Assembly (NCBI RefSeq): GCF_030028105.1
Contig: NC_092379.1
Location: 28,141,821 to 28,205,820, forward strand
Origin: Mobula birostris
Taxonomy: Eukaryota
Reading direction: 5' to 3'
Length of the DNA stretch: 64,000 bases
Below the pieces are notes generated by a model, which made no database searches, had not been told where the DNA came from, and saw nothing but the letters and a program-made list of their open reading frames with translations. The translations under genes and the position numbers were made by a program. Within the stretch, counting starts at the first letter, position 1; each line of letters opens with the position of its first letter. This document shows, in pieces, positions 4,901 through 58,567 of the stretch.

Positions 4901-4957
4901 CAGCCAAGAAGGGCCAAAGGCCTGCTTCTGTGCTGCAGTTTTTCTATGGTTTCTATG
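1905..4957 (+). mobile_element. CR1 LINE (ORF2 endonuclease-RT, decayed) inserted in ERV pol
   Basis: APE motifs (GVYYRSPN, GDFNFPHINW), RT motifs (QGSVLGPLLF, KFADDTK), CR1 C-terminus and TTTCTATGG tail. ERV RT motifs resume on both sides. Boundaries approximate. Confidence 0.92.
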
Positions 4958-30856: not shown

Positions 30857-33704
30857 TAGCTCTATACACCGCCCTTACACATCTAGAGAAGTGGGTTGCT
30901 GATGTATGAATGCTGTTCTTGGACTACAGTTCAGCATTCAAAACTGTCCCTACCCAGAGCTACAATCGTCTAATTAAGTTTGCTGAGGACACTACATGAT
31001 TGACCTAAACTCAAAAAATAATGAGGGAGACCAGAGAGAAGAATTCACCACCCTGATACATTGGCATCGACAAAACAACTTCTCTCCCAATGTCGCAGAA
31101 CACAAAGAAAAAGCAAAAAAGCTGGTTGTGGACTACAGGCAGAATGGAGACAGGCTAATCACAATTGACATCAATGGATCTTTATACCTCAAGTTCTTCG
31201 GCATGCAAATCACTGAGGATCTGACTTGGTCGGTACATACCGGTTGTGTGCTAAAAAAAGGCAAAAAATGGCGTCTTTTACCTCAGAGGGTTGAAGAAGT
31301 TTGATATTGAACTCCAGATCCCAAGAACGCTCTACTGGAGCACAAATGAGAGCATCCCGACTGGCTGCCTCACTGCCTGGTGTTGGAACTGTACTTTCCT
31401 CAATCGCTGACCTCTGCACAGAGCGGTGCGGACAGCGCATCTGTAGGTGCGACCTGCCCACTATTCAGGACATTTACAAAGAGAAGTGTGTAAAAAGGGC
31501 ACGAAGGATCATTAGAGACCCGGGACACCCCAAGCACAAAATGTTCCAGCTGCTACTGTCCGGGATACGGGACTGCAGCATAAAATCCAGGACCAACAAG
31601 CTCCAGAACAGCTTCCTCCACCAAGTCATCAGACGTATTAACACATGCTGATACAATTGTATCTCTGTGTTATTTTGACTGCCCTGTTGTACATCGTATT
31701 TATTATATTTTTTTAATTACGCATTGCATATTTAAAAGGAGATGTAACGGGAAGATATTTACTCCTCATGTAAATGAAGGATGTAGGTAATAAAGTCAAT
31801 TCTATTCGATTCAATTCATATTTCTTCTCTGTCACAGAAACAGACACGATGCCTGAGTGTACACCGCTGTGATGTTTCTCTGCTACCTCATGCCCCCAGC
31901 ATTATCCAAACTAGCATATCTGTTGTTGAGGGAGATTTCCACAGGGCACTCTGCACTGGCTGTTTAAGTCCTTTGTCTTTCTTGTCACCCACTTTCCTGC
32001 CTCCTGTAACTCTGGTGCACCCACCATCTTTATGCCCAATCTATCACGCCCTCAGCCTTTCGAAACCTCCAGCGTTCATCCAGTTCCAGTTTCGGCTCCA
32101 TAAAACGGTGTGTAAGAATCTGAAATTGCATGAATTTCATCCATGAGTAGTCGTCAGTGATACTGGCAAACTCCAACTCTTCCAATATCCAACAAGGAGT
32201 ACATGCAAATATTAAGGTCTCGATAATGATTGCGGCCAGACACTCCGAATGCTCACTCCTTCCCATACATGTTGCATGGCCGCTGAGTTAGTACCGCATT
32301 TTTTGTGTATACCGTTCAAGTTTTCTGCCTGGCATATTACAGCTCATGCTGAGCAAATATAAAGAATGAAACAAAATAACAATAAACAAACTACGGGGAA
32401 AAAATCCTGCTACATTTCGCATTCTCTTAACCACGCCTAATCTCGCTGAAACATCGAAGAAGCCATTCCTCAAATTCATTTTCTGACCCTGTCGATTCCA
32501 CCGACTGCCGTACCGCTTTCCCCTACCTTTTTCGAATTTGTTCTCGTTAATCATTCCATATCACTTTTCAAGACACGAAAATGCCTCGAATTGGTGGGTT
32601 ATACATTCGAATCGGCGAACGCGAGAGAGCTCCGTCTTATCATCTTTGCGATCTCCAATTGGCAGTAGTTTTAAACACCAAACGGCCGCGAGTAGATGCC
32701 TTATTTTCTCAATCGGCGAACCTGTCAGAGCTATGTTTTCTCACGTTTGTAACACCGATAAGCTCTGGTTAAAAGATCAAACAGCCGCCAGTTGACGCCG
32801 TGTATACTCAATAGGCAAACTTGAGTGAGCTCCGTCCCAACACGCTTCGGATCTCCGACTGGCCGCAACTGAAATACATATTTCATGAATTTCCATTTCC
32901 AACAGTTCGCATACGTGATTGTTCATTGCACATCGTAGCCGAGATTTCACTTACATCATTTTCAATTTCTTTATTTCTGTATTCATTTATTCAATCGTTC
33001 ATTCATTCATCCGTTGATTAAATAACTACATAATTAAATTATTTATTGTTTATTTATTTGCTTAAATTTCAATACAGTTGGTGGCGTAATATGCAAGATT
33101 ACGAAAGACAAATCGGTAACTGTGGAGGTGCAAGGAAATTAAAGCTCTGCAGAGTATTTGTGGTGAGATCTCACCGAACCCCAGTGTAATAACAAAACCC
33201 TAGACAAATCTACGTTCAATACTAAAGCAGTGTATTAGTCTTCCTATTCGACTGTGGCACTTTGCATTTCCACTTTTCCCTCAACCATGAGCATTTTCCA
33301 GCCTCACCAGTATTAAATACATGTTTTGCTTTTTTTTATTGTAGCTCTGCAGAGCAGTACCTCACATTCGACGTAATTTGTTGCATTTGCCTTGCGTATG
33401 CGCTGAGCTTCTCTTTGTTTTCTTCTGGCCTCTTTAACCCGAGGTTCCTTCAGCTAGAACAGAGAAAGTTGTGCAGTACAGCATAATATTGAACCTTCGG
33501 AATACCGTGCGGTGGAGACCGATATAAATCAGTTCATCATCCTTCTAACGTTTCGCCACACCCTGCACTTACCTTTGTCCTCCATTTATCCTATATCGAC
33601 ATGGCAGCAATTTTCTCGATTATCAGTTTATCAACTCTGCCTGCAGCAGTTTGTGCGGAGTTTAGAATTTTACAGGAGGTTTGCATTGGAATTCTCCAAG
33701 AATG

Positions 33705-33783
<79 letters not shown>
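33705..33783 (+). repeat. (AAT)n microsatellite
   Basis: Pure AAT run. The paralogous site at 43086-43136 is (GAT)n(AAT)n. Confidence 0.98.
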
Positions 33784-33786
<3 letters not shown>

Positions 33787-34315
33787 CATATCAATAATAA
33801 TACAATATAACCACTGACATCTCACTGAAACTGCCTTCCACTCAACTTACTGCAAAGCTGCGGACTCTTGCCCTGTCTTTTGCCGCAGTGGATATTATTT
33901 TATCCGAAACAGACTTCCAGATTTTCCAAACCCCTGGACACAAATGACAAGATTGACATCGAATGTGAATAGAAGGGAAAGAAGGGTTGCCTGTTTTACG
34001 CCTTTGGTCAAGCACACTCAAATTGAAACTGCTTGCCGGCAGATTTCCTCTCATCCATACTTTCTGTGGAAGAACAGTAGCCATGAGGGATTGGTGCATC
34101 CAAAGGCTGAATGTGCCATCATACTCTTCCGAGGCTGAGGGAGAGCTTGTCAGCCCATCCCCGTACATGCCGTCAAGATCAGAGCATAGACTGATTGCCG
34201 TTCAAAAATATAAGAACTGAAACATACTTGAAAACCCGAGGCACACGTTACAACATTAATAAAGAACAAATAACCTTTTTTTTTTTCGGAAGAAAAGTGT
34301 CCGGTTCAAGGCGAA

Positions 34316-34374
34316 TGACTCAGACTCATCAATTTATAAGCCATCTCCGTCACACAGGTTGAACGATAGGAAGT
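34316..34374 (+). promoter_or_regulatory. Candidate promoter of NAR-TCR V1
   Basis: TGACTCA (AP-1/CRE-like), TTTATAA and GATAGGAAGT (GATA/ETS-like) ~180-235 bp upstream of the leader ATG. Partly conserved at ~43668-43726. No Ig octamer seen. Confidence 0.35.
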
Positions 34375-34550
34375 CATGGGCGGGGCTTCCTCGCTCGGTT
34401 CAAAGACACGAAACAGAATCAAAACCAACAACTGTCCCTCAACAACCTGTTGTTAACAGTTTATTGTCCGTATTTGAAGTACATTCTACCATAACTCTGC
34501 AGGCCGTGAGCTTCATCTCCTCGACACTTCAGCAATATTCCTTGTTGACG

Positions 34551-35000
34551 ATGGGAGTCTTCCTTCTTTTCACACTCTGGCTCTGCTTACGGCGTGAGTA
34601 CCTTTTAAACATCTACATTACATTTACTTTAAATCTGTCTGAGCCCTCTGAGATTCAACCGGCTTAGATTATTTGTGCGGTTCATCTATGACTGCAACTC
34701 ACTTTTCTCCGTTTCTTTTATTCCTAGGTTCATTGAGTCAGTCGGTGACTCAGAGCCCGTCCATTGTAAACTCGAATGAGTGTCAGACTGCCACTATCAC
34801 CGGCAGTTTCAAGCCTGGTTCTGCTGTTGAATATCGCTTTCGACCAACTCAGCGGCCGAACGGAAAGAAGTCACCCGCGGGGGGAGATTTTTTTACTTTG
34901 ATTAAGAAAACGGACATGCAGTTTTCTTTGGAAATTCGGGACCTGCGATTGGAAGACAGCGGTACCTATTACTGTCAAGCTGTGTACAGATGGCGTTCAG
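34551..35000 (+). pseudogene. NAR-TCR V segment 1: leader exon 34551-34593, V exon 34728-35000; probably non-functional
   Basis: Leader MGVFLLFTLWLCLR, GT-AG intron, IgNAR-like V ending FSLEIRDLRLEDSGTYYC. Cys23 codon is GGC (34802-34804). A 22-nt deletion after 34841 is compensated by an extra T at 34888-34894. Confidence 0.88.
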
Positions 35001-35038
35001 CACAATGATGGGCTTCGGCTTTGTGCTGTACAAAAACT
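35001..35038 (+). promoter_or_regulatory. RSS of NAR-TCR V1 (22-bp spacer)
   Basis: CACAATG, 22 nt, ACAAAAACT directly after the YYCQAVYRWRS coding end. Confidence 0.93.
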
Positions 35039-35366
35039 TTCGCTGTAGCTTATTCCTGATTAAGACGGAGCAGAATGGATCTGCGGGTAAGTTCATCTTC
35101 CTGTCTCGCTGTGGATCCGTCCTAAAGTCCAGCAAGCTGTCAGTTTTTTTTTTTCTAAACATGTACATTCTTTATGTTCCCACCTCGAGTGTGCGCAGAT
35201 TTTGCTGCCTACCTGAGGCATGTGTCAATAAATGTCGACAGAGAATTAAAAAAAAAACACATTCTTTTCGCCAACGAGAGACAGAATCGTTCCTAAACAC
35301 TTGGAACCAAAAAACGCCAGCGCTGCGAATTTAATTCCTGCTCGACGCTTTCATTGATTCGCCAGC

Positions 35367-35438
35367 AGATTTCAAATTCACGTAAGATACTGTGTACAGT
35401 TCGGAACGAGCACAGTGGAAGAGATCTGAACCAAAATA
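35367..35438 (+). other. NAR-TCR D segment 1 (coding 35395-35410) with 12/12 RSSs
   Basis: AGATTTCAA-12-TACTGTG [TACAGTTCGGAACGAG] CACAGTG-12-ACCAAAATA. No stop in any forward frame. The 5' nonamer is weak. Confidence 0.85.
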
Positions 35439-35726
35439 GAAAATCATAAAAATAAAAATAACTCATTGTTTAAACAAGTTATTCTACATATTCCATACCA
35501 AAAAAATACTAACCGGGCGTTGTTCACCTTCTAATCTGTTTATATTATTTTAAAATTCCATATTGCATATGTATTTTTGATTGAAACGTATGCTATGTGT
35601 TTTTTTTCTTTTCGGAATCGGTGTGCGGTGCGTGTTTCTATTTTATTTTAATTTGGTCTTGCTTTCTCGCAGAGAGCATATTGGAAAGCCTATTGTAGCG
35701 TTTCCTAAGCAGATTCGCGTGAGTGT

Positions 35727-35823
35727 AGTTGTTGTATAGTGGAGACTGAGAACAGGATCATTGTGTATGAATGGGAGACTCATACTCTAGAAGGAACAGG
35801 GACAATGGTCACGGTGAGACCCG
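35727..35823 (+). other. NAR-TCR J segment 1 (coding 35766-35823) with 23-bp RSS
   Basis: AGTTGTTGT-23-CATTGTG, then YEWETHTLEGTGTMVTVRP and a phase-1 donor GTAAGT. Confidence 0.92.
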
Positions 35824-36840
35824 GTAAGTATCCACAGACATCGACCATTCTTCAAATATCGCACCCATTTTCACTATCGTTTGATAGATGATAGATTGAT
35901 TTAAGATCTTGTGTGGTGTGATTCTGTAAACTGAATCTACACTCACTGTGTAGAAAGGCAAGGTGGTAAACTGAATTAACCGAGGGAGATGGAGAGGGAG
36001 ATTTCTGCTATGAGTAAGGATGAAATACTGGTATAATCGTCGCAGAATGAATCCAACAGGCTGTTGTTAGACTGATTGAAATTATTGTTAGCAGCTTAAG
36101 GCATAAACGGCAAGCAGAAAAAAAAAATATATATGAATATGCCACCGAAATGCAAGAAATAATGAATCTTGTTTTCTCCAATTTATTCTCAAGCAGTACA
36201 GTGAATTGCATAATCAATTGATGAAAAATTAAGAAAAGAGAAGGGAACAAAACCTTTATATTGCCGCGTGCTAAACGCCAATTGAAAATAAATCTTCGCC
36301 TTCAACTGCTTAGAAAATTTTCTCACCAATCTGTCCCGTTCAGTCTCATTACTCTGAAGAAAATGTAACAATGCAAGAGGCTGTAAGTTATGGGGGATAT
36401 GTTATTTTAAAAAAAGAAGCAATTCTGGATGGAGCATCTATCATTTCGAAAAATAAAACAGGCAAATCCATCATTATTCCGAATCAAACTGACCTTTAAA
36501 ATAAACACCATAGAGCTCATAAAAAGGAGTTCGGCCCATTTTATGTTTGTAGACTCTCTGCAATTGTTCTTTGAAATTAGTTCTTCCTTCCACATAGATG
36601 TCCAAAATATGAAACATGTTTTGATAATAGCAAAATGTCCGCAAATTAGCATGAGTCCTTGATTTTATTTCACTGCAGCAATTTAGATAATAATTGTCAA
36701 CAACAATAAATATTGTTTACTCACATTTCAAACGAAGCAAGTTTGCGTGAAAGAAAAAAATCTCCTTAACGTATTTGGGACGTTTTTTTTTCTGAGAGTT
36801 ATCGGTAAATCAGCAATAATCTTCCTTTATATTCACACAG

Positions 36841-37142
36841 AATCCATTTCTCCACCGTCTCAGACTCCTGAACTGCAAACTACACTTGCCGATACTGCCA
36901 TTTAACCTGTGGATATGACGTGTAATGTCGCAACACAATACACTGGTATCGCCAGCTTCCAGAGCAGGTACCCATATTCCTGCTCCAGGGTCAAACTTTC
37001 GGTGCACAATATAAGACAAACAATGCCGGAGAACGAATTACTGGTTTTCTCGATCCTGGTAAGAAAATCAGCCAGCTGACGATCTCCAAAGTGCAACTGG
37101 GAGACGCTGCTGTGTATTACTGTGCAATGAGTCGGTTTGCAG
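36841..37142 (+). pseudogene. Leaderless supporting TCR-delta-like V segment 1, pseudogene
   Basis: Acceptor CACACAG, then WYRQLP..LTISKVQLGDAAVYYCAM. A 1-nt deletion gives TAA at 36903-36905, and TAT>TAA at 36923-36925 relative to copy 2. Confidence 0.9.
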
Positions 37143-37181
37143 CACTGTGATGCCGCGCATGGACAGCGCTGTTCAAGAACT
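37143..37181 (+). promoter_or_regulatory. 23-RSS of supporting V1
   Basis: CACTGTG, 23 nt, TCAAGAACT. Confidence 0.88.
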
Positions 37182-37203
37182 ACGGTGCTTCTCGTTATAA
37201 GCA

Positions 37204-37242
37204 CACAGTGCTAGGAAGCAGCGAGGGAACAATACAAATACT
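37204..37242 (+). promoter_or_regulatory. Second 23-RSS downstream of supporting V1
   Basis: CACAGTG, 23 nt, ACAAATACT, 22 nt after the first RSS. Confidence 0.8.
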
Positions 37243-37834
37243 CCTTTGGTTTTATCATATGAATACACCAAAGCCGAGAACGGAGACAACGGCAAGAAAC
37301 TGCAGTGTGGTGGGATTTTTAGTAGAATGATAACAGAGACAATAAGAGTACCATAATCAACACCCAAAATATGCTGGGAGAAATCATTATGTCCTGATGG
37401 AAGTACTTGGTTCGAAACATCATTTCCATGGAAGTTGCCGGATCTACCGATTCCTCAAATTTCTACTTATTGAAGACACACAACTTATAAGAATATATTC
37501 CTGGAACAAAGAGGCATGATTGCCTTCAGGAAATTCGCTTTTTAGATCAGAAGTGCGTAAGGCATAGCAACAGAATTGGGCCAATCAGCCTATCCAGTGT
37601 GGCCCGCCATTCCATCATTATTGTTTCCGGTTCTGAATACATTCACCAGTATATCCATGTGGTACATGCAATCTACCAGCCATTTTGAATGAAGGAACAT
37701 CGCAAATCCGTTTGCGCCGTGTGAACGTCGGCAGAAAAGTAACGGACATTAAAATGTTACAAATTCTAAACAATAAATGTGTAATCTATTGTTTTGGAAT
37801 GATACGGAATCACGAACTACAGGTATCATTACGA

Positions 37835-39055: not shown

Positions 39056-39062
39056 TCGATTA

Positions 39063-40990
39063 TTAACCATATAACCATATAACAATTACAGTACGGAAAC
39101 AGGTCATCTCGGCACTTCTAGTCCGTGCCGAACTCTTACTCTCACCTAGTCCCACCGACCTGGACTAAGCCCATAACCCTCCATTCCTTTCCTGCCAATA
39201 TAACTGTCCAGTTGAACTTTAAACCACAACATCGAACTTGCTTCAACCACTTCTGCTGGAAGCTCGTCCCACACAGATACCACTCTCTGAGTAAAGAAGA
39301 TCGCCGTCATGTTACCCCAAAACTTTTGTCCTTTATCTCTCAGCTCGTGTCCTCTTGTTTGAATCTCCCCCACTCTCAATAGAAACAATCCTATCCACGT
39401 CAACTCTATCTATCCGCCTCATAATTTTAAATACCTCTATCAAGTCCCCCCTCAACCTTCTATGTTTTAAAGAATAAAGACCCAACTTCTTCAACCTTTC
39501 TTTGTAACATAGGTGACAAAACCTAGGTAGAATTCTCGTAAATCTTCTCTGTACTCTCTCCATTTTGTTGACATCTTTCATATAATTCGGTGACCAGAAC
39601 TGTACACAATACTCCAAATTTGGCCTCTAACAATGCCTTGTACAATTTCAACATTATGTTCCAACACTGATACTCAATGCTCGGATTTATAAAGGCCAGC
39701 ATACGAAAAGCTTTCTTCACCACCCTATCCACATGAGATTCCACCTTCAGGGATCTATGCACCATTATTCCTAGATCCCTCTGGTCCACCTCATTCCTCA
39801 ATGCCCTACCATTTACCATGTGCTTCCTATTTTTATTAGTCCTACCAAACTGTAACACCTCAAAGTTATCGTCATTAAACTCCATCCGCCATCTTTCAGC
39901 CCACTCTTCTAACTAGCGTAAATCTCTTTGCAAGCTTTGAAAACCTACTTCATTATCCACAACTCCACCTAGCTTCGTATCATCTGTATACTTATTCATC
40001 CAACTTACCACGGCATCATCAGATCATTAATGTATATGACAAACAACATTGGAACCAGTACAGATCCCTAAGGCACACCACTAGTCACTGGCCTCCAATC
40101 TGACAAACAGTTATCCACCACTACTCTCTGGTGTCTTCCATCCAGCCACGGTTGAATCGTTTTTACTACTGCAATACTAATATCTATCGATTGAACATAC
40201 CTAACTAACCTTCCGTGTGGAACCTTGTCAACGGCCTTACTTAGGTCCATATAGACAACATCCACCGTTTTACACTCGTCAACTTTCCTAGTAACCTCTT
40301 CAAAAAGTTCAATAAGATTTGTCAAACATGACCTTCCACGCACAAATCTTAATGAGACCCTGTCTCTGCAGTTAATTATATATACTATCTCGAAGAATAC
40401 ATTACATCAATTTTCCCACCACTGACGTCAAACTCACAGGCCGACAATTGCTAGGTTTACTCCGAGAACCCTTTTTTTAAACAATGGAACAACATGAGCA
40501 ATACGCCAATCTTGCGGCACCATCCCCGTTTCTCATGACATATGAAATACTTCTGTCAGAGCCCCTGCTATTTTCACAATATAAAACTTCCCTCAAGGTT
40601 CGAGGTAATACCTTGTCAGGACCCGGAATGTTATCCACTTTGATATTCCTTAAGAGCGCCAGTATTTCCTCTTCTTTAATCATCATAGTTACCATAACGT
40701 CCCTACCTATTTCCCTTACCTTACACAATTCTACATCCTTCTCCTTAGTGAATACGGAAGAAAATCAATTGTTCAGAATCTCCCCCATCTGTTTTGGCTG
40801 CACACATAGTTGTCCACTCTGATTCTCTAAGGGACCAATTTTATCCCTGACTAACTTTTTGCTATTAATATAACTGTAGGAACCTTTGCGATTTATGATC
40901 ACCTTACTTGCCAAAGCAAAGTCATATATTCTTTTAGCTTTTCTAATTCATTTCTTAAGATTCTTTTTCCATTCATTATATTCTTTGATT
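39063..40990 (-). mobile_element. CR1 LINE, truncated and internally deleted
   Basis: Minus-strand RT motifs (RGRSCLTNLIELFEEVT, EYCVQFWSP) and an ATATGGTT tail of the same subfamily as 47472-59850. Confidence 0.9.
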
Positions 40991-43903
40991 AGGTTCCGGA
41001 AAAATCAGGATTGTCAGTGTTTTCTGGGGTGGTGCAGTTCGAAGGGCTGGAGTGGGTTATTCTGCGCTGCATCATGAAATAAACAACTAAATACAACTTG
41101 CAAGGAATTAAAACAACATTTACTAATGAAGAGACATGGTAAATAAATAGGTGCATAACCGATTGCCAACCAGACAACAATACTTAATGTATTTTATTTT
41201 CTCTAGAAACACTCAAATTGCATTTTGATTTTTTCGCTTCCAAACTGGGAATTTTATTTTAAACTCAATGGCCAATTGGAACGTATTTTCGTGAACTGTT
41301 TCTTTTTAACAAGATGAGTTGAAAGCGTGTGGAAAGCAGTTCACAATTTATATTGCAAATACAAACTACTCACCAGTCATTTCGTGGGAAGGAGAGTGGA
41401 ACATCCTGGGAAATCGGTGATATCACGCCCTCAGCCTTTCGAAACCTCCAGCGTTCATCCAGTTCCAGCTTCCGCTCCATAAAACGGTGTGTAAAAATCT
41501 GAAATTGCATGAATTTCATGAGTAGTCGTCAGTGATACTGGAGAACTCCGAGTCTTCTCTTCCAATATCCAGCAAGGAGTGCATGCGAATATGAAGATCT
41601 CGATAATGATTCCGGCCAGACACGCCGAATGCTCGCTCCTTCCCATACATGTTGCATGGTCGCTGAGTTAGTACTGCATTTTTTGTGTATTCCGTTCAAG
41701 TTTTCTGCCTGGCATATTATGCTCATGCTGCGCAAATATAAAGAATGAAAGAAAATAACAATAAACAAACTACGGGGAAAAATGTCTGCTACATTTCGCA
41801 TTCTCTTAATCATTCCTAATCTCGCTGAAACATCGAAGAAGCAATTCCTCAAGATCGTGTTGTAACACTGCCGACTCCACCGACTGCCGCACCGCTTTTC
41901 CCTACCTTTTTCGAATTTTTTCTCGTTAATCATTCCATATCACTTTTCAAGACACGAAAATGCCGTGAATTGGTAGGTTCTGCATTCGAATCGGCGAACG
42001 CGAGAGAGCTCCATCTTATCATCTTTGCGATCTCCAGTTGGCAGCAGTTTTAAACAACAAACCGCCGCGAGTAGATGCCTTATTTTCTCAATCGGCGAAC
42101 CTGTCAGAGCTATGTTTTCTCACGCATTGTATCTCCGATAAGCTCTGGTTAAAAGATCAAACAGCCGCCAGTTGATGCCGTGTATACTCAATAGGCAAAC
42201 TTGAGTGATCTACGTCTCAACACGGTTCGGATCTCCACCTGGCGGGAATTTAAATACATATTTCATTAATTTCCATTTCCAACAGTTCGCATACGTGATT
42301 GTTCATTGCACATCGTAGCCGAGATTTCACATACATCATTTTCAATTTACTTATTTCTGTATTATTTTATTCACTCATTCATTCATTCATCTTTTGATTA
42401 AGTACCTACATAATTAAATTATTTATTGTTTGTTTATTTATTTGCTTAAATTTCAGTACAGTTGGTGGAATAATATGCAAGATTATGAAAGACAAATCGG
42501 TAACTGTGGAGGTACAAGAAAATTAAGTTCTGCAGAGTATTTGTGGTGAGATCTCACCGAACCCCAGTGTAATAACAAAACCCTAGAAAAATCTACGTTC
42601 AATACTAAAACAGTGTATTAGTCTTCCTATTCGACTGTGGCACTTTGTATTTCCACTTTTCCCTCAACCATGAGCTTTTTCCAGCCTCACCAGTATTAAA
42701 TACACACTTTGTTTTTTTTTTATTGTAGCTCTGCAGAGCAGTACCTCACATTCGATGTAATTTGTTGCATTTGCCTTGCGTAGGCGCTGAGCTTCTCTTT
42801 GTTTTCTTCTGGCCTCTTTAACCCGAGGTTCCTTCAGCTAGAACAGAGGAAGTAGTGAAGTACAGCATAATATTGAACCTTCGGAGTGCGGTGTGCTGGA
42901 GACCGATATAAATCGGTTCATGATCCTTCTAACGTTTCGCCACACCCTGCATTTACCTTTGTCCTCCATTTATCCTATATCGACATGGCAGAAAATTTCT
43001 CTAATATCAGTTTATCAGTCTCTACCTGCAACAGCTGCTGCAGAATCTAGAATTTTACAGGAGGTTTGCATTGGAATTCTCCAAGAATGATGATGATGAT
43101 GATGATGATGATAATAATAATAATAATAATAATAATATATCAATAATATTACGATATAACCACTGACATCTCAGTAAAACCGTCTTCCACTCAACTTACT
43201 GCAAAGCCGCTGTCTCTTGCGCTGTCTTTTTCCGCAGTGGATATCAACTTCATTTTATCCAAAACAGACTTCCAGATTTTCCAAACCCCTGGACACAAAC
43301 GACAAGATTGACAACGAATGTAAATAGAAGGGAAAGAAGTGTTGCCTGTTTTAAGCCTTTGGTCTAGCACACTCAAATTGAAACTGCTTGGCTGCAGATT
43401 TCCTCTCATCCATACTTTCTGTGGAAGAACAGTAGCCATGAGGAATTGGTGCATCCACAGGCTGAATGTGCCATCAGACTCTTCCGAGGCTGAGGGAGAG
43501 TATGTCTGCCCATCCCGCGTACATGCCGTCAAGATCAGAGCATAGACTGATTTTCGTCAGAAAATATAAGAACTGAAACATACTTGAAAACTCGGGGCAC
43601 ACGTTACAACATCAATAAAGAACAAATAACCGTTTTTTTCGGAAGAAAACTGTCCGGTTCAAGGCGAATAATTCAGACTCGTCAATTTATAGGCCATCTC
43701 CGCCAGTCAGGTTGAACGATAGGAAGTCATGGGTGGGGCTTCCTTACTCGGTTCAAAGACACGAAACAGAAACAAAACCAACAACTGTCCCTCAACAACC
43801 TGTTGTGAAGAGTTTACTGTCCGTATTTGAAGTACATTCTACCATAAATCTGCAGGCCGTGAGCTTCATCTCCTCGACACTTCAGCAATATTCCTTGTTG
43901 ACG

Positions 43904-44378
43904 ATGGGAGTCTTCTTTGTTTTCACACTCTGGCTCTGCTTACGGCGTGAGTACCTTTCACACATCCGCATTACATTTACTTTAAATCTGTCTGAGCCCT
44001 CTGAGATTCAACCAGCATAGATTATTCGTGTGGTTCGTGTATGACTGCAACTTACATTTCTCCGTTTTTTTGTTGTATTCCTAGGTTCATTGAGTCAGTC
44101 CGTGACTCAGAGCCCATCCATTGTAAACTCGAATGAGTGTCAGACTGCCACCATCACCTGCAGTTTCAAGCCTGGTTTTACTGGTACATATCGCTTTCTC
44201 ACTGGAAAATTCTTCAGGCAGACCAACTCAGCGACCGAACGGAAAGAAGTTACCCGCGGGGGAAGATTTTTTCCTTTGATTAAGAAAACTGACATGCGGT
44301 TTTCTTTGGAAATTCGGGACCTGCGATTGGAAGACAGCGGCACCTATTACTGTCAAGCTGTGTACAGATGGAATGCAG
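43904..44378 (+). CDS. NAR-TCR V segment 2, apparently intact: leader exon 43904-43946, V exon 44085-44378
   Basis: MGVFFVFTLWLCLR|RSLSQSVTQSPSIVNSNECQTATITC...KFFRQ...GGRF...FSLEIRDLRLEDSGTYYCQA. There are 47 residues from the W41-equivalent to Cys104, the CDR2-less spacing of IgNAR V, with GGR, FSL and EDSGTY in register. Confidence 0.92.
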
Positions 44379-44416
44379 CACAATGATGGGCTTCGGCTTC
44401 GCGCTGTACAAAAACT
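44379..44416 (+). promoter_or_regulatory. RSS of NAR-TCR V2 (22-bp spacer)
   Basis: CACAATG, 22 nt, ACAAAAACT. Confidence 0.93.
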
Positions 44417-44744
44417 TTCACTGTAGCATATTCCTGATTCAAACGGAGCACAATAGATCTGTGGTTAAGCTCATCTTCCTGTCTCGCTGTGGATCCGTCC
44501 TACAGTCCAGCTAACTGTCAGTTTTTTTTTTTCTAATCATGTACAGTCTTTATGTACCCACCTCGCGTGTGCGCAGGTTTTGCTCCCTACCTGAAGCATG
44601 TGTCAATAAATGTCGACAGAGAATTAAAAAAAAAACACATTCTTGTCGCCAACGAGAGGCAGAATCGTTCCTGAACACTTGGAACCAGAAAACGCCAGCG
44701 CTGCGAATTTAATTCCTGTTCGAATCTTTCATTGATTCGCCAGC

Positions 44745-44816
44745 AGATTTCAAATTCACGTAAGGTACTGTGTATATTTCGGAACGAACACAGTGGAAGA
44801 GATCTGAACAAAAATA
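44745..44816 (+). other. NAR-TCR D segment 2 (coding 44773-44788) with 12/12 RSSs
   Basis: AGATTTCAA-12-TACTGTG [TATATTTCGGAACGAA] CACAGTG-12-ACAAAAATA. Frames YISER, IFRNE and YFGT are all open. Confidence 0.87.
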
Positions 44817-45166
44817 GAAAATAATAAATATATAAATAACTCATTGTTTAAACGAGTTATTCTCCATATCCCATACAAAAAAAATACTAACCTGGCGTTG
44901 TTAACCTTCTAATCTGTTTATATTATTTTAAATTTCAATATTGCATATGTATTTTTGATTGACACGTATGCTATGTGTTTTTTTATCTTTTCGGAATCGG
45001 TGTGCAGTGCGTGTTCCTATTTTATTTTAATTTGGTTTTGCTTTCTCACAGAGAGCATATCGACCTGCCGGCAAATGGGGAATATTCTTGCTATGTGTTG
45101 CATTAACAACCCTCGAAACATTGGGAAGCCTATTGTAGCGTTTCCTAAGCAGATTCACGTGAGTGT

Positions 45167-45263
45167 AGTTGTTGTATAGTGGAGACTGAGAACAGAATCA
45201 TTGTGTATGAATGGGAGACTCATACTCTAGATGGAAAAGGGACAACGGTCACCGTCAGACCCG
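45167..45263 (+). other. NAR-TCR J segment 2 (coding 45206-45263) with 23-bp RSS
   Basis: AGTTGTTGT-23-CATTGTG, then YEWETHTLDGKGTTVTVRP (NAR-type DG.G motif) and a phase-1 donor GTAAGT. Confidence 0.93.
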
Positions 45264-46262
45264 GTAAGTATCCAGAGACATCGCCCATTCTTCAAATATC
45301 TCACCCATTTTCACTATCGTTTGATAGATGATCGATTGATTTAAAATCTTGTGTGGTGTGATTCTGTAAACTGAATCTACACTCAGTGTGTAGAAAGGCA
45401 AGGTGGTAAGCTGAATTAATAGAGTGAAATGGAGAGGAAAATTTCTACTATGAGTAAGGATGAAATGCTGGTGTCATCGTCGCAGAATGAATCCAACCGA
45501 CTGCTGTCAGACTGTGGGAAATATTGTTAGCAGCTTAAGGTATAAACCGCAAGCAGAATATATATATATATATATGAATATGTCACCGAAATGCAAGAAA
45601 GAATGAATCTTGTTTTCTCCAATTTATTCTCAAACAGTACAGTGAATTGCATAACCAATTGATGAAAAATTAAGAAAAATGGGAACAAAACCTTTATATC
45701 GCCGTGTGCTAAACTCCATTGAAAATAAATCTTCGCCTTCAGCTGCTTAGAAAATTATCTGACCAATCTGTCCCGTTCAGTCTCATTACTGTGAAGAACA
45801 TGTTACAATGCAAGAGGCTGTATGTTATTTGAAAAAAAAGAAGCAATTCTGGGTGGAGCATCTATCATTTCGAAAAATAAAACAGAAAAATCCATCATTA
45901 TTCCGACTGAAACTGACCTTTAAAATAAACACCACAAAATTGATATAAAGGCGTTCGGCCCACTTTATGTTTGTAGGCTCTCTGCAACTGTTCCATGAAA
46001 TTAGTTCTTCCTTCTGCATAGATGTCCAAAATATGAAACATGTTTTGATAATAGCAAGATCTCCGCAATTTAGCACGAGTCCCTGATTTTATTTCACTGC
46101 AGCAATTCAGATAATAATTATCAACGACAATAAATATTGTTTACTCACAGTTTAAACGCAACAAGTTTGCGTGAGAGAAAAATCTCCTTAACGTATTTAG
46201 GACGTTTTTTTTTCTGACAGTTATCGGTAAATCAGCAGTAATCTTCTTTTACGTTCATACAG

Positions 46263-46565
46263 AATCAATTTTACCAGCGTCTCAGACCCCTGAACTGCAA
46301 ACTACACTTGCCGATACTGCCATTATAACCTGTGGATATGACGTGTATTGTCGCAACACACTGCACTGGTATCGCCAGCTTCCAGGGCAGGCACCCATAT
46401 TCCTGCTCCAGGGTCAAACTTTCGGACCACAAGATAAGACAAAACATGCCGGGGAACGAATTACTGGTTTTGTCGATCCTGGTAAGAAAATCAGCCAGCT
46501 GACGATCTCCAAAGTGCAACTGGGCGACGCTGCTGTGTATTACTGTGCAATGAGTCCGTTTGCAG
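46263..46565 (+). CDS. Leaderless supporting TCR-delta-like V segment 2, intact
   Basis: Phase-1 acceptor puts it in frame with J2: (E)SILPASQTPELQTTLADTAIITCGYDVYCRNTLHWYRQLPGQAPIFLLQG...LTISKVQLGDAAVYYCAMSPFA. Canonical C23, W41 and C104, plus an extra CDR1 Cys. Confidence 0.93.
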
Positions 46566-46604
46566 CACTGTGATGCCGCGCATGGACAGCGCTGTTCAAG
46601 AACT
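46566..46604 (+). promoter_or_regulatory. 23-RSS of supporting V2
   Basis: CACTGTG, 23 nt, TCAAGAACT. Confidence 0.9.
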
Positions 46605-46626
46605 AGCATGATTCTCGTTACAAGCA

Positions 46627-46665
46627 CACAGTGCTGGTAAGCAGCGAGAGAACAATACAAAAACT
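46627..46665 (+). promoter_or_regulatory. Second 23-RSS downstream of supporting V2
   Basis: CACAGTG, 23 nt, ACAAAAACT (consensus heptamer, 8/9 nonamer). Confidence 0.85.
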
Positions 46666-48831
46666 CATTTGGTTTTATCATGTAGATACACCACAGCCGA
46701 GCACGGAGACAACGGCAAGAAACCGCAGTGTGGTTGGATTTTTAGTAGAATGATAACAGAGGAAATAAAAGTACCACAATCAACACCCAGAATATGCTGG
46801 GAGAAATCATTATGTCCTGATGGAAGTTCTTGGTTCGAAACATCATTTCCACAGAAGTTGCCGGATCTACCGACTCCTCAAATTTCTACTTATCGAAGAC
46901 ACGCAATATTCAAGAATATATTCCTGGAGCAAAGAGGCATGATTGCCTTCAGGAAATTCACATTTTAGCTCAGAAGTGCGTAAGGCATAGCAACAGAATT
47001 GGGCCAATCAGCCTATCGACAGTTGTGAAGGAAAGCACAAGCATAAAAGGTTCTACGATGAGTTGTTTTTGTGCACAGTGTAAAGATTATTAACCCTGAT
47101 GCACTTTGTTACAAAGAATCTGCTCCAATATTTCACGGAATTAGATACACTGAAACAGGTTGATAGTTCATAAACTTTAAAGTGAACAGTGTTATAAGGA
47201 AAATAATCAATAAACGGCTGGGCCTAATTGGGGTGTTAACTAAAACTCACAAATGGGAAACGAGGCCTATACTGCGACTGAAAAGGAAATCTAAACATTA
47301 TCAGAATATCGCTTGTCGTCAGAACCAGTTGACTCGAAAGTCCAATTTCTCAGAGAAGAGCGAAAGCAAACAGGCAGCGAAGCTCTGCTGTGGTATGTCC
47401 AAGTCTCGGTAAGTATGAGGACGACAAGTATGGAGTTAAATACTATCACGTTTAAATAATAATCTAGAATAGCCCAGTGGCTGTGCCCCTTTGCAATATG
47501 TACTTCTGTTTGAGTACTGTTGGTGGGGGGCGGGGAACAGCTTACCTAGGAGAACCAACAGTGGCCGTGCCTCCGACACAGTGCCTGGCCCTGTAGCTCA
47601 GAAGGGCAGGGAAAGGAAGACGAGGGCAGTCGTAAAAGGGGACTTGATAGTTAGGGGGTCAGATAGGCGATTCTGTGGACGCAATCAGGACTCCGGGATA
47701 TTAGTTTGCCTCCCTGGAGCCAGAGCCCGGGATGTCTCTGATCGTGTCCAAGGTATCCTGAAGTGGGAGGGTGAGAAGTCAGAGATCGTGGTAGCCATAG
47801 ATACCAATTACATAGGTAGGAAATTCATATGGAGTTAGGATGGGAGTTGAGAAGAAGGACCGCAAAGGTAGTAATCTCGGGATTTCTGCCAGTGACAATC
47901 GACAGTGAGATTAGGAATGGAATGAGGTGGAGGACAAATGCGTGGCTGAGAGATTGGAGCAGGGGTCAGGGATTCTAGGTTCTGGATCATTGGGACCTCT
48001 TTAGGGGCAGGTGTGACCTGTACCAAAAGGACCGGTTGCACTTGAATCCTAGTGGGACAAATATCCTGGCAGGGATATTTGCGAAGGCTACTGGGGAGAC
48101 TTGAAACTAAAATGGTTGGGGGGGTGGGAATCAAATTGAAAAGGCGAGGATAGAGGAGGTTAGTTCATAAATAGAGGAAGCTAGTAGACTGTGTGTGAAT
48201 GAGGATAGGCAGGGGACAGAGAACGGGAGCACTCAGACCGAAAATGTATTCGAGAGGGAGAAGAAGATAACAGAGTTGTTGGCACCATTAGGGATAAACA
48301 GAGAGTAAGAGGTGGAGACTTTCTTAAATGCATCTGTTTTAATGCTAGGAGCATTGTAAGAAAGGTAGATGAGCTGAGGGCATGGGTTGATACCTGGAAA
48401 TATGATGTTCTAGTTATTAGTGAAACATGGTTGCAGGAGGGGTGTGGTTGACAACTAAGTATTCCTGGATTTCGTAGCGTCAGGTGTGCTGGAATCGGAA
48501 GGAGCATGAGGGGCATGTGTTGCATTGCTTGTCATAGAAAATATTAAAGCGGTGCTTTGGCAGGGTAGATTAGAGGACTCGTCTAGGGAGCCTACTTGGG
48601 TGGAATTGAGGAATGGGAAACGTGTAATAACGCTAGCAGGGGTGTATTATAGACCACCTAATGGCGAGCGAGAATTGAAGGAGCAAATTTGTAAGGAGAT
48701 AGCAGATGTTTGTAGTAAGCACAAGGCTGGAATCGTGGAGGATATTAATTTTCCACTCATAGACTAGGTGCGGCGGGGTCCTGAATTACCCCTATGAGCT
48801 GTGCTCGATTATCCCTATGAGTGTGCTTTTG

Positions 48832-54902: not shown

Positions 54903-56790
54903 GCTTGTACATTTCTTACACCGGCAAAGGAAGGAGGAGTTATTTCAGAGACAGCTGATGCTCAGCACGGGAAGATAAAAGACAAGGTCAGATGATAGAC
55001 CTCAGATACATGGTTTGGGACACTGAATGAGCTTTGTTGTGCCCGCAGAAAAAGTGGGTTTTTGGAGGATCGATCAGGCTGATTGATCAATGGCTCTTGC
55101 AGTGGAAAGGAAAGGGCAGTGACCGGTGAGGAGTTCTCCATCAGTCCACCCTTGCCTAGTTGATAGCTCCACCACAGATAACCAGTCGTCTTTGCTGTGG
55201 TCACAGTCGGTGACTTTTAAAGAATTTCGGTGGAAAAGGAGAATATCGACGGCGTCAGCTCACCCGAAAACGCAAATCTCTTCCTCTCTCTCTCTCCCTC
55301 TCTCTCCATCACTAACCAACTCAATACCACAAACTGAACTGAACTGAACTTCACTCATCATCGTAAGACTGTATCTTTTCACCCCTAAACATGAAGAAGC
55401 TTGATTTCCATATATTTCCACACTTATTGATATACTTATAGATAATCATGACTAACATGTTGATTTATCTACATTTATATTGCTGTAATGCATAGTTACT
55501 AATAAATAATATTAGGTAATAGCAATAATGAACTACAAAGTGCTTTCCATCTCTGCTGGTTCTTTATTCCCGTCACGGGGTACGTGACCCTGGGAAACCC
55601 ATTCTGTAAAAGGAATGGATGGTTTGGAGTTTGTAAAATGTGCGCAAGATATTTTTTTTTTTGCAGCAATACCTAGAGGACAAACTAGAGAAGGGGCAAT
55701 GTTGGATCTCCTGTTGGGGAGTGAGATAGGGCACGTGACAGATGTATGTACTGGGGAGAACTTCGCGTCCGGTGACGATAATGCCATTAGTTTCAATATC
55801 ATTACGGAGAAGGATAGGACTGGACCCAGGGTTGAGATTTTTGATTGGAGAAAGGCTAACTATGAAGAGATGCGAAAGAATTTAGAAGGAGTGGATTGGG
55901 ACAATTTGTTAATGGGAAGAACGTAATAGAGAAATGGAGGTCATTTAAAGGTGAAATGTTGAGGGTACAGAAACTTTATGTTGCTGTTCGGTTGAAAGAA
56001 AAGATTAACAGTTTGAGAGAGCCATGGTTTTCAAAGGATATTGGAAGCTTGGTTCGGAAAAAAAACAAAAAAAAAAAAAACAGAGAGATCTACAATAAAT
56101 ATAGGCAGCTTGGAGTAAATGAGGTGCTTGAGGAATATAAAGAATCTAAAAAGAATCTTAAGGAAGAAATTAGAAAAGCTAGAAGAAAGTATGAGGTTGC
56201 TTTGGTAGGTAATGTGAAAATAAATCCAAAGGGCTTCTAGAGTTATATCAATAGCAAAAGGATAGTGAGGGATAAAATTGGTCCTTTAGAGATTCAGAGT
56301 GGACGGTTATGTGCAGAGTCAAAAGAGCTGGGGGCGATTTTGAACAATTTATTTTCTTCGGTGTTCACTAAGGAGAAGGATATTCAATTCTGCAAGGTAC
56401 GGGAAACAAGGAGGGTAGTTATAAAATCTATGACGATTAAAGACGAGGCAGCACTGGCGCTTTTAAGGTATATGAAAGTGGATAAGTCTCCAGGTCCTGA
56501 CAGGATATTCCCTCGGACCTTGAGGGAAGTTAGTGTGGATATAGCAGGGGCTCTGACAGAAATATTTCAAATGTCATTAGAAACGGGGATGGTGCCGGAG
56601 GATTGACGTATTGTTCATGTTGTTCATTGTTTAAAAAAGTTTTTAAGAGTAAACCTAGCAATTATCGGCGTGGGAGTTTGACGTAAGTCGTGGGTAAATT
56701 GATCGAAAGTATTCTTAGAGATTGTATATATAATACTCTGGATAGACAGGTTCTAATTAGGAACAGTCTACATGGATTTGTGCGTGAAAG

Positions 56791-58567
56791 TGTCATGGTC
56801 TGGTCCGTGAATTCCGTATTCCGATACACGGACTGGTCCATCGACCCTTGCTCCAGGTTTTTCTGTCTACCCGGTTTCTGATCTTGTTGAGCTAACTGAG
56901 TCCCCTGATGTTCGTTGGGACTGGCTGCATACACACCTTCAGACAAGGGCGTGGCTGCTGTATTCTTCTCGTCCTTACTCCTCGTATCCCTTACTCTGCC
57001 TTTTGTTTCCTCGCCTGAAGCCCTGCCTTGTCTTGCCGGTATCTCTCGCAACGCCTGATGTTCTCGTCTCGCCTTGCTTTGCCTGAGGCCGTGCCTTGTC
57101 TTTCTGGTAACTCTCGCCTCGCCTGCAGTCTTGCCCTGGAACCACCCTGTACTTAGTCCCTTCCTGTTCCTTGCCTCCGTAATGTAAGCCAGGTCGTCTC
57201 GCCGTTCCCTGCGGTTGGTTCTGTCCCTTCCTTTTCCTTGCCTCCGTCGGGTAAGCCAGGCCCTCTCGCGGTTATCTGCGGTTGGTTCTATCCCTCTTCA
57301 CCCTTGCCTTCTTCGGGTAAGCCAAGCCGTCTCGCCGTTACCTGCGGTTGTTCTGCCCCTTTCTGTCCCTTGCCTCAGTCGGGTAAGCCATGCCGTTTCG
57401 CCGTTACCTGCGTTTGGTTCTGTCCCTTCCTGTCCCATGCCTTGGTCGGGTGGTGAACTGCGCCCTGCCCAGGAGTACCGCGCCCTGCCCAGGTGATCCG
57501 CGCCCTGCCCCGGAGGAGCCTAACTAGCCTCAAGCCTGAAGCCTGCAACCTCCTGCCTAGCCTCAAACCTGAAGACTGCAGCCTCCTGCCTAGCCTCAAA
57601 CCTGAAGACTGCAGCCTACTGCCTAGCCTCAAGCCTGAAGACTGCAGCCTACTGCTTAGCCTCAAGCCTGAGGAATCCAGCCTCCAGCCTCGCCTCAAGT
57701 CTCCTGCCTCCAGACTCCAGCCTCTCATCGTGTCCTGCCTCCATCCTGCAAAGTCGCCTCACCTCAAGTCTGTAGCCTCCTACCAAACCTCGCCTTAAGT
57801 CTCTAGCCTCCTGCCAAACCTCGCCTCAAGTCTCTAGCCTCCTGCCAAGCCTCGCCTCAAGTGTCTCGCCTCCTGTCAATCCTCGCCACAGGTCATCTGC
57901 CTCCTGCCAAGCCTCGTCTCAAGTCTCCTGCCTCCTGCGAAGCCTCGCCTCAAGTCTCCTGCCTCCTGCCAGCCTCGCCTCAAGTCTCTTGCCTCCAGTC
58001 ATGCCTCGCCTCAAGTCTCCTGCCTCCTGCCAGCCTCGCCTCAAGTCTCTTGCCTCCAGTCATGCCTCGCCTCAAGTCTCCTGCCTCCTGCCATGCCTTG
58101 CCTCAAGTCTTCTGCCTCCTGTCAAGCCTTGCCTCATGTCTGCTGCCTCCCTCAAGCCTTGCCTCAAGTCTTCTGCCTCCTGTCAAGCTTCGCCACAGGT
58201 CTCCTGCCTCCTGCCAAGCCCTGCCTCAAGTCTCTAGCCTCCTGCCAAACTTCGCCTAAAGTCTCTCGCCTCCAGCCAAGCCTCGCCTCAAGTCTCTAAG
58301 GCTCCAGCCTCGTCCTGCCTGCCAGTTAATCTTCGCCCCGGCCTGGTTCTGGGGTCCGAGCCAGAGACAAGACCCAGGTACTGGGTCCTTGTCCAGTCTC
58401 TGGCTCGGAGTCCAAGCCCGGGCTCCTAGCTCTTCTCTCTTGTCCTGTTCCGGTTTCCCGGTTGTCCTATCTATGTCCTTGCCATCGCCCTGTATCCTAG
58501 TCCTGTACCTAGTACTTCAGTGTCTGTGTCTTGCACTTGGATCCGTTCCAGCCACCGCTTTATGACA
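56791..58567 (+). mobile_element. Solo LTR (1777 bp) with internal tandem arrays
   Basis: TGTCAT...ATGACA termini, 5-bp TSD GAAAG/GGAAG, CR1 RT continuous across it. Confidence 0.88.
57525..58290 (+). repeat. Minisatellite arrays inside the LTR (33-bp unit, then a ~30-31-bp unit)
   Basis: CTCCTGCCTAGCCTCAAACCTGAAGACTGCAGC repeats, followed by GCCTCGCCTCAAGTCTCCTGCCTCCTGCCA-type repeats. Confidence 0.9.

What the first reader, a model, noticed from the sequence alone, without database searches (positions are those of the whole stretch)
43904..46665. Complete NAR-TCR cassette: a doubly rearranging, two-V-domain T-cell receptor unit
Seen: leader, CDR2-less IgNAR-like V with RSS, D, J with a phase-1 donor, a 999-nt intron, and a leaderless TCR-like V that is in frame with J and has its own 23-RSS. 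Known: this is the NAR-TCR architecture described in nurse shark (Criscitiello, Saltis and Flajnik 2006), where the supporting V rearranges to TCR-delta D/J. Inference: the window lies in the TCR alpha/delta locus and encodes NARV-D-J-Vdelta-D-J-Cdelta chains. The system is not new, but the ORF track only shows it as unrelated fragments.
Basis: partly seen in the sequence, partly recalled or inferred. Interest (0 to 1): 0.85.

Follow-up and report, generated by a model that had tools for sequence, protein, structure and literature searches.

The report
Germline NAR-TCR cassette in a ray
This 2.7 kb stretch is an intact germline cassette for the shark and ray "NAR-TCR", a T-cell receptor delta chain with an extra antibody-like domain on top. 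The system is already known, and this is one more copy among many in this genome.

Summary
The parts are:
- leader, 43904-43946
- VNAR-like V without CDR2, 44085-44378, with a 22-nt-spacer RSS
- one D, 44773-44788
- J, 45206-45263, with a phase-1 donor
- a 999-nt intron
- leaderless second V, 46263-46565, in frame with J

All published NAR-TCR hallmarks are present: a Cys in the a-b loop, Phe in place of the canonical Trp, and a Cys in CDR1 of the supporting V.

RNA contigs from public runs come from 90-97% alike paralogues or alleles, not demonstrably this copy. They show the leader splice, NAR V-(D)-J junctions, J spliced onto the supporting V, and supporting-V junctions into a J.

Those junctions sit at the proximal heptamer (46566).

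Relatives in other elasmobranch assemblies have the same anatomy. One gene model runs on into a TCR-delta constant region.

An upstream tandem copy (34551-37242) is a pseudogene.

Not shown here: the constant region for this copy, its own expression, and its orientation relative to D-J-C-delta. Unverified scan notes place D-J-C-delta about 4.35 Mb before the window.

The scan has already found this cassette type many times elsewhere in this genome.

One unexplained extra: a 61-nt-period row of 23-RSSs follows supporting Vs in the window and in two other assemblies, with a degenerate second unit in a third.

The parts
43904..43946 (+). Leader exon (residues MGVFFVFTLWLCLR plus the first base of a split codon), GT donor at 43947
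   Evidence: Read directly from the sequence. RNA contigs of paralogues in runs X2 and X4 show the joint 43946>44085 with GT..AG ends.
44085..44378 (+). NAR-TCR V exon. It is VNAR-like and has no C'-C'' (CDR2) region, an extra Cys in the a-b loop (NEC), FFRQ in place of the WYRQ-type motif, and 64 residues between the canonical cysteines.
   Evidence: Pfam V-set E 3.4e-9. Best PDB sequence matches are VNAR domains, E 1e-13 to 1e-7. Aligned with NAR-TCR gene models of other elasmobranchs at 44-55% identity, with the hallmark residues invariant.
44379..44416 (+). RSS of the NAR V: CACAATG, 22-nt spacer, ACAAAAACT
   Evidence: RSS scan. The same 22-nt spacer is found in the NAR V RSS of loci L001, L002 and L003. 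RNA V-J joints leave the V at 44371 and 44379.
44766..44816 (+). Single D segment, 16 nt at 44773-44788 and open in all three frames. Its 5' heptamer is TACTGTG with a weak nonamer. Its 3' 12-RSS is CACAGTG-12-ACAAAAATA (44789-44816).
   Evidence: It is conserved in the twin cassette. A D with a 12-RSS lies at the same distance, about 400 nt after the V RSS, in L001-L003.
45167..45263 (+). J segment. The 23-RSS is at 45167-45205 (heptamer CACAATG read on the minus strand). J coding is 45206-45263 (YEWETHTLDGKGTTVTVRP plus G), with a phase-1 GT donor at 45264.
   Evidence: RNA joints enter J at 45213 and 45217, with 28 and 33 non-germline letters between V and J.
45264..46262 (+). J-to-supporting-V intron, 999 nt, GT..AG, containing a (TA)n run at about 45549-45586
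   Evidence: An RNA contig laid from 46262 onward is preceded by 25 letters of J-like sequence (run X2). Another RNA contig joins the NAR V end to 46274 with no intron (run X4).
46263..46565 (+). Leaderless supporting V exon of TCR delta/alpha type. It has a Cys in CDR1 (GYDVYCRN), WYRQ, a full-length CDR2 region, and ends in YYCAMSPFA.
   Evidence: Pfam V-set E 1e-10. Aligned with supporting Vs of NAR-TCR gene models at 40-56% identity, with the CDR1 Cys conserved.
46566..46604 (+). Proximal 23-RSS (CACTGTG-23-TCAAGAACT). This is the cleavage site used in the transcripts that were seen.
   Evidence: RNA contigs leave the germline at 46565 (runs X4 and X7), 46560 (X6) and 46548 (X4), and three of them continue into the same J-like sequence. 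It is identical in the twin cassette. It is positionally homologous to the first RSS in L001-L003.
46627..46665 (+). Distal 23-RSS (CACAGTG-23-ACAAAAACT), the second unit of a 61-nt-period RSS row. A degenerate third unit follows at 46688-46748. Its function is unknown.
   Evidence: No RNA contig junction was seen at this site.
34551..37242 (+). Upstream tandem twin cassette, about 91% identical. The duplicated unit is 32042-37594 matching 41421-47017. It is a pseudogene.
   Evidence: In the NAR V, the first canonical Cys is changed to Gly, and a 22-nt deletion plus a 1-nt insertion put about 14 codons out of frame. In the supporting V, a 1-nt deletion creates a TAA stop and a frameshift. The D, the J and both RSS units are retained.

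Best explanation
This is a germline, apparently functional NAR-TCR cassette of a ray, and it is one unit of a large multi-copy family. I infer the following steps.

1. In a developing T cell, RAG joins the NAR V (22/23-RSS) to the cassette's own D (12-RSS on both sides) and J (23-RSS).
2. RAG separately cuts the supporting V at its proximal 23-RSS (46566) and joins it to distant TCR-delta D/J segments.
3. Transcription starts more than 100 nt upstream of the ATG.
4. Splicing removes the 138-nt leader intron and the 999-nt J-to-V intron, giving L-NARV(DJ)-V-delta(DJ)-C-delta.
5. The resulting three-domain chain has a single-domain, antibody-like binding site on top of a conventional delta V. 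The conserved extra cysteines, one in the a-b loop of the NAR V and one in CDR1 of the supporting V, probably tie the two domains together.

Shown here: the anatomy, the hallmark residues, and RNA proof of both splices and both rearrangements, at family level.

Inferred: that this particular copy is used, that its partner segments and constant region are delta, and the interdomain disulfide.
For: - Anatomy and reading frames were read directly from the sequence. RSS sites occur only at the expected positions and obey the 12/23 rule.
- The NAR V matches VNAR structures best by sequence and lacks the CDR2 region. Both V exons are V-set domains.
- The hallmarks listed in PMC1845163 are all present.
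- RNA contigs show five things:
  - the leader splice 43946>44085;
  - V-(D)-J joints 44371>45213 and 44379>45217, with 28 and 33 inserted letters;
  - a contig spanning from the NAR V end into the supporting V;
  - J-like letters directly before 46262;
  - supporting-V junctions at 46565 (twice), 46560 and 46548.
- Three of those junction contigs, from three runs, continue in frame into the same J (...KETKLIFANG).
- NAR-TCR gene models from other elasmobranch assemblies share the layout.
- The C-terminal part of one such model, P0005, matches human TCR-delta constant chains best. The top nine PDB hits have E about 1e-10, against 1e-5 for Ig constant regions.
Against: - Every RNA contig that covers 44251 or 46427 differs from this copy there. 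Expression is therefore shown for the family, not for this cassette.
- The sequence of the constant region attached to these transcripts could not be read.
- The J used is not in the window.
- According to unverified scan notes, D-J-C-delta lies about 4.35 Mb before the window, while this cassette reads towards higher coordinates. Joining would then need an inversion or a second D-J-C cluster.
- The proximal nonamer is only a 6/9 match.
- One junction contig (run X6) shows a direct V-J join with no D or N letters.
Confidence: 0.88

Rival explanations
1. The cassette looks intact but is silent or rarely used. The transcripts seen would then all come from other copies of the family.
For: All RNA contigs differ from this copy at several positions. 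For example, at 44251 and 46427 every covering contig carries the other base. The proximal RSS nonamer is weak. The neighbouring twin is already a pseudogene. Scan notes indicate that many other copies exist.
Against: All exons are open, all splice sites and RSSs are present, and all hallmark residues are kept. Four contigs in run X2 and one in run X4 are at least 99% alike over the part that was laid. Logan contigs drop rare variants, and the individuals sequenced may differ from the assembly.
Confidence: 0.2
2. The supporting V is used with TCR-alpha J and C (direct V-J joining) as well as, or instead of, TCR-delta.
For: One contig (run X6) joins the V at 46560 straight to the J, with no D or N letters. 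In nurse shark the same V segments serve both delta and alpha chains in most delta V families (PMC5931798). The J motif KLIF occurs in both alpha and delta J segments; this last point is from my own knowledge.
Against: Three contigs from three runs use the same J, which fits a small J-delta pool better than the dozens of J-alpha segments. Two have 12-13 inserted letters, and a fourth has at least 25 letters before any J, as expected when a D is used. The gene model P0005 links this cassette type to a delta constant region. All literature describes NAR-TCR as a delta chain (PMC12227049; PMC6795676).
Confidence: 0.1
3. It is an IgNAR heavy-chain V-D-J cluster rather than a TCR cassette.
For: The first V is most similar to VNAR domains. 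IgH clusters lie on the same chromosome according to unverified scan notes and PMC12227049.
Against: There is one D, not three. J is followed by a second V exon in frame, not by constant exons. None of the 10 downstream ORFs scanned has a C-set domain. The a-b loop Cys and the missing Trp are NAR-TCR marks, not IgNAR marks. RNA shows J spliced to the second V.
Confidence: 0.01

Closest known systems
NAR-TCR (NAR-TcR) of cartilaginous fish. First described in nurse shark (Criscitiello, Saltis and Flajnik 2006), found in elephant shark (PMC1845163), and mapped in three sharks and a stingray (PMC12227049).
   Same: The layout is the same: leader, VNAR-type V, own D and J, splice onto a leaderless delta V that has its own RSS. 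The a-b loop Cys, the missing Trp and the CDR1 Cys in the supporting V are all present. There are two independent rearrangements.
   Different: Nothing differs in kind. This is another copy in a ray, 44-56% identical at protein level to the representative gene models found. The conserved row of extra 23-RSSs behind the supporting V is not mentioned in any paper I could read. The 2006 paper itself was not available to me.
IgNAR heavy-chain clusters (VNAR)
   Same: The N-terminal V is a single-domain-type V without CDR2, and VNARs are its best sequence matches.
   Different: IgNAR has three D segments and its J is spliced to constant exons. It keeps the canonical Trp and lacks the a-b loop Cys. 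Here there is one D and J is spliced to a second V.
TCR-mu of marsupials and monotremes
   Same: It is a three-domain TCR chain with an unpaired, antibody-like N-terminal V on a supporting V (PMC3457774).
   Different: TCR-mu is convergent. Its N-terminal V is VH-related and its supporting V is germline-joined or lacks a D. It is a separate locus in mammals.

Membership tests
NAR-TCR | N-terminal V related to IgNAR V and lacking the CDR2 (C'-C'') region | tested here: met
   The nine best single-V-domain PDB sequence matches are VNARs, best E 1e-13, with no gap from FR2 to FR3. There are 64 residues between the canonical cysteines, against 71 in the supporting V.
NAR-TCR | NAR V has a normal split leader | tested here: met
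   ATG at 43904, a hydrophobic leader and a 138-nt intron. The GT..AG joint is seen in RNA.
NAR-TCR | Cys in the a-b loop and no canonical Trp of the WYRK-type motif (PMC1845163) | tested here: met
   The residues are NECQTATITC and KFFRQ. Both positions are invariant or nearly so in eight NAR-TCR gene models. In the VNAR alignment the Phe aligns with the VNAR Trp.
NAR-TCR | The cassette has its own D and J, with RSSs that allow V-D-J joining | tested here: met
   The order is V 22/23-RSS, D with a 12-RSS on each side (the 5' nonamer is weak), and J 23-RSS. RNA V-J joints carry 28 and 33 inserted letters.
NAR-TCR | J is spliced in frame to a leaderless supporting V | tested here: met
   Phase-1 donor at 45263/64 and acceptor at 46262/63, with the frame kept. 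RNA contigs of paralogues show this junction.
NAR-TCR | Supporting V carries a Cys in CDR1 | tested here: met
   The residues are GYDVYCRN, and the Cys aligns with the CDR1 Cys of all eight relatives.
NAR-TCR | Supporting V rearranges through its own RSS | tested here: met
   RNA contigs leave the germline at or just before 46565 and run in frame into a J. This is family-level evidence, not evidence for this copy.
NAR-TCR | The chain ends in a TCR-delta constant region | not testable with these tools
   Only the first 30 letters beyond each junction are returned. Indirect support comes from a relative's gene model, P0005, which ends in a region that matches TCR-delta C best.
NAR-TCR | The cassette lies within the TCR alpha/delta V region, placed so that it can reach D/J/C-delta | tested here: inconclusive
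   There is no D-delta, J-delta or C in the window. Unverified scan notes place D-J-C-delta about 4.35 Mb before the window, with NAR-TCR cassettes on both sides of the window. The orientation is unknown.
IgNAR heavy chain | Three D segments, with J spliced to IgNAR constant exons | tested here: not met
   There is one D. J is followed by a V exon. No C-set domain was found in the 10 of 26 downstream ORFs scanned.

The most novel reading that the evidence does not exclude
The supporting V of NAR-TCR cassettes is followed by a conserved tandem row of two to four 23-RSSs with a 61-nt period, not by a single RSS. In the one comparison available, this row is specific to supporting Vs.

The distal, better-consensus signals may be kept by selection for a function. 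They might capture or load RAG for a V that lies megabases from its partners. They might permit a staged or second rearrangement. They might act as deleting elements. The junctions seen in RNA use only the proximal signal.
Probability: 0.3. Interest if true: 0.6.

Novelty: new member of a known kind. Interest (0 to 1): 0.3.

Why it matters
The cassette itself adds no new biology. It is useful for annotation, because gene finders see only fragments of it. It documents, with RNA junctions, that the doubly rearranging delta chain is in active use in this ray lineage, and that copies are born and die by local tandem duplication: an intact copy sits beside a 91% identical pseudogene.

The part worth a specialist's attention is the RSS row. 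Two results stand out. Transcripts use the weaker proximal signal while a stronger one sits 61 nt further on. The same periodic row is also found in other elasmobranch genomes. Together these offer a natural system for asking how RAG chooses among adjacent signals.

Tried and rejected
- The search for homologous proteins with the NAR V found nothing. Its length filter excludes the longer gene models.
- AlphaFold on the NAR V alone gave mean pLDDT 42, which is unusable, so no fold search was made.
- The PDB sequence search and the ESM Atlas search with the supporting V returned only generic V domains, mostly antibody light chains. They cannot tell a delta/alpha V from an Ig V.
- I tested whether the distal RSS is a tandem copy of the V's 3' end plus its RSS, using the window alone. 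TRF found nothing. The alignment score above shuffles came from the RSS motifs themselves. The 22 nt before each heptamer gave p of about 0.05 in one cassette and no signal in the other. Only the cross-species comparison made the 61-nt repeat evident.
- The J seen in RNA was searched for in the window with up to 3 mismatches and gave no match.
- Ten downstream ORFs have no Pfam domain at all. The upstream ORFs are LINE debris.
- Criscitiello 2006 and 2010 and Ott 2021 are not held in the paper library. The defining features were therefore taken from papers that cite them.
- Two relatives' loci could not be fetched because the files were too large.
Full report
**What is there**

- The leader exon runs from the ATG at 43904 to 43946 and ends in phase 1, before GT.
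- After a 138-nt intron, the first V exon (44085-44378) is open and ends in the residues YYCQAVYRWNA.
- It is followed at once by CACAATG, a 22-nt spacer and ACAAAAACT (44379-44416).
- A 16-nt D (44773-44788) lies between a TACTGTG heptamer with a poor nonamer and a good 12-RSS (44789-44816).
- The J (45206-45263, ...LDGKGTTVTVRP) has a 23-RSS on its 5' side (45167-45205). It ends with one extra G before GT.
- Exactly 999 nt later, an AG acceptor opens a second V exon (46263-46565). G+AA forms a Glu codon and the frame runs on into a complete V domain that has no leader.
- A scan of all 64 kb for heptamer-spacer-nonamer sites found seven. All seven are at the expected places of this cassette and of a twin 9.35 kb upstream. 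Chance is not an issue.

**What the two V domains are**

Both exons are Pfam V-set domains.
- Against all PDB chain sequences, the first V matches shark VNAR domains best, E 1e-13 to 1e-7. The alignment has no gap between FR2 and FR3, so it shares the VNAR loss of CDR2.
- There are 64 residues between its canonical cysteines, against 71 in the second V.
- PMC1845163 lists the marks that separate NAR-TCR V from IgNAR V. They are a leader, a Cys in the a-b loop and no canonical Trp. For the associated delta V they are no leader and a Cys in CDR1. All of these are present here: NECQ, KFFRQ and GYDVYCRN.

An exhaustive HMMER search with the first V found two-V gene models from other elasmobranch assemblies.
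- Aligned with eight of them, the window's domains are 44-55% (first V) and 40-56% (second V) identical, with the hallmark residues conserved.
- One model, P0005, continues into a region whose best PDB matches are human TCR-delta constant chains. The top nine hits have E about 1e-10, against 1e-5 for Ig constant regions. It includes the charged transmembrane motif.
- Three loci fetched from such models show the same order and spacing. Each has a V with a 22-nt-spacer RSS, one D with a 12-RSS about 400 nt on, a J with a 23-RSS about 380-420 nt further, an intron, and then a leaderless V. These are L001 from GCA_020745735.1, L002 from GCA_009764475.2 and L003 from GCF_021869965.1.

**RNA evidence**

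Seven public RNA runs of two coded organisms were laid on the cassette. They are Logan contigs, and most are 90-97% alike to the window, so they come from paralogues, alleles or a sister species. They show:
- the leader splice 43946>44085 with GT..AG ends, in two runs;
- two V-to-J joints (44371>45213 and 44379>45217), with 28 and 33 letters between that match neither side, as expected of D plus added nucleotides;
- a contig that runs from the NAR V end across a junction into the second V at 46274;
- a contig laid from 46262 that is preceded by 25 letters of J sequence (three mismatches to this J), which is the predicted J-to-V splice;
- four contigs that leave the germline at 46565 (twice), 46560 and 46548.

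Three of those four, from three runs, continue in frame into the same J (...KETKLIFANG). The inserts are 12, 0 and 13 letters.

So both rearrangements and both splices of the NAR-TCR scheme occur in this lineage.

No contig proves that this copy is the one transcribed. Every contig covering 44251 or 46427 carries the other base.

**Which RSS the supporting V uses**

The finding's end coordinate (46665) is the nonamer of a second signal. Directly after the V lies CACTGTG-23-TCAAGAACT (46566-46604). Then, 22 nt later, comes the near-consensus CACAGTG-23-ACAAAAACT (46627-46665).
- The RNA junctions sit at or just inside 46565, so the weaker proximal signal is the one used.
- Use of the distal signal would leave an in-frame TGA at 46571-46573 in the coding end.

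Comparison with the fetched loci shows this is a shared feature.
- L001 has four 23-RSSs, at 7080, 7140, 7201 and 7262.
- L003 has three units, at 20032, 20093 (heptamer spoiled to TACAGTG) and 20154.
- L002 has one good unit and one decayed unit.
- The window has two good units and a decayed third (46688-46748), whose spacer shares an 11-nt run with L001 unit 3.
- The period is 60-61 nt throughout.
- Among the non-first units, heptamer and nonamer positions hold about 1.2 bits each. The 22-nt stretch between signals holds 0.4 bits.
- The one conventional V available (L002, minus strand) has a single RSS.

I could not explain the row. Within the window alone, the idea that it is a duplicated V end plus RSS is not statistically supported.

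**Surroundings**

- The duplicated unit 41421-47017 matches 32042-37594 at about 91% identity.
- The upstream twin is dead. Its NAR V has lost the first canonical Cys and has a 22-nt deletion and a 1-nt insertion. Its supporting V has a 1-nt deletion that creates a stop.
- There is no other V in the window.
- None of the 10 downstream + strand ORFs scanned has a constant-type Ig domain.
- The rest of the window is LINE debris and simple repeats.

**Locus context**

Unverified notes of this scan say the following.
- The genome is a ray.
- NAR-TCR cassettes occur from about 3.47 Mb before to about 2.2 Mb beyond this window.
- TCR-delta D-J-C lies about 4.35 Mb before it.
- IgW clusters lie further out.

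This matches the linkage map in PMC12227049, which already shows NAR-TCR V genes in three sharks and a stingray.

If those notes are right, this + strand cassette points away from that D-J-C. Joining would then need an inversion, as happens for inverted V genes at other antigen-receptor loci (my own knowledge), or else a second D-J-C cluster. I could not test this.

**Verdict**

- The system is known, and the scan has already reported it many times on other DNA of this genome. This is a new member of a known kind, with modest interest.
- The only thing that is not ordinary is the conserved RSS row and the use of its weakest, first member.

Noticed in passing
window 46566-46748; window 37143-37325; L001 7080-7322; L003 20032-20214; L002 8502-8623: A tandem row of same-orientation 23-RSSs with a 60-61-nt period follows the supporting V in this ray and in three other elasmobranch assemblies (two to four recognisable units). 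Heptamers and nonamers are better conserved than the 22 nt between the signals. The single conventional V available for comparison has only one RSS.
   Followed up: partly
window 34551-37242: An upstream twin NAR-TCR cassette, about 91% identical, is a pseudogene. The NAR V has a Cys-to-Gly change and a frame-disturbing indel pair. The supporting V has a 1-nt deletion with a stop. Its D, J and RSS units are still intact.
   Followed up: yes
window 45061-45119: A 59-nt stretch just upstream of the J RSS is present in the intact cassette and absent from the twin (the alignment break between 35680 and 35681).
   Followed up: no
window 46541-46616 versus 37118-37193: The end of the supporting V plus the whole proximal RSS is identical over about 48 nt between the two copies. 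The copies otherwise differ at about 9% of sites. This could be chance (about 1%), gene conversion or constraint.
   Followed up: no
window 2255-6011: LINE-type retrotransposon fragments, with Pfam hits to endonuclease-reverse transcriptase, RVT_1 and RNase H. Related repeats lie at 39062-40983 and 56133-59852.
   Followed up: partly
window 57157-58562: Long proline/serine/leucine-rich tandem-repeat ORFs are open in all three + frames. This is a simple repeat array with no Pfam hit in the piece tested.
   Followed up: no
window 46655-46900: One RNA-run contig (run X2, 609 nt, about 93% alike) covers sequence beyond the RSS row of a paralogue. It could be a germline read-through transcript of an unrearranged supporting V, or DNA carry-over.
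   Followed up: no
L002 2272-2537 (minus strand): In assembly GCA_009764475.2, a conventional leader-type TCR V with a single 23-RSS lies about 2.7 kb upstream of the NAR-TCR cassette, in the opposite orientation. This shows mixed V orientations in that locus.
   Followed up: no
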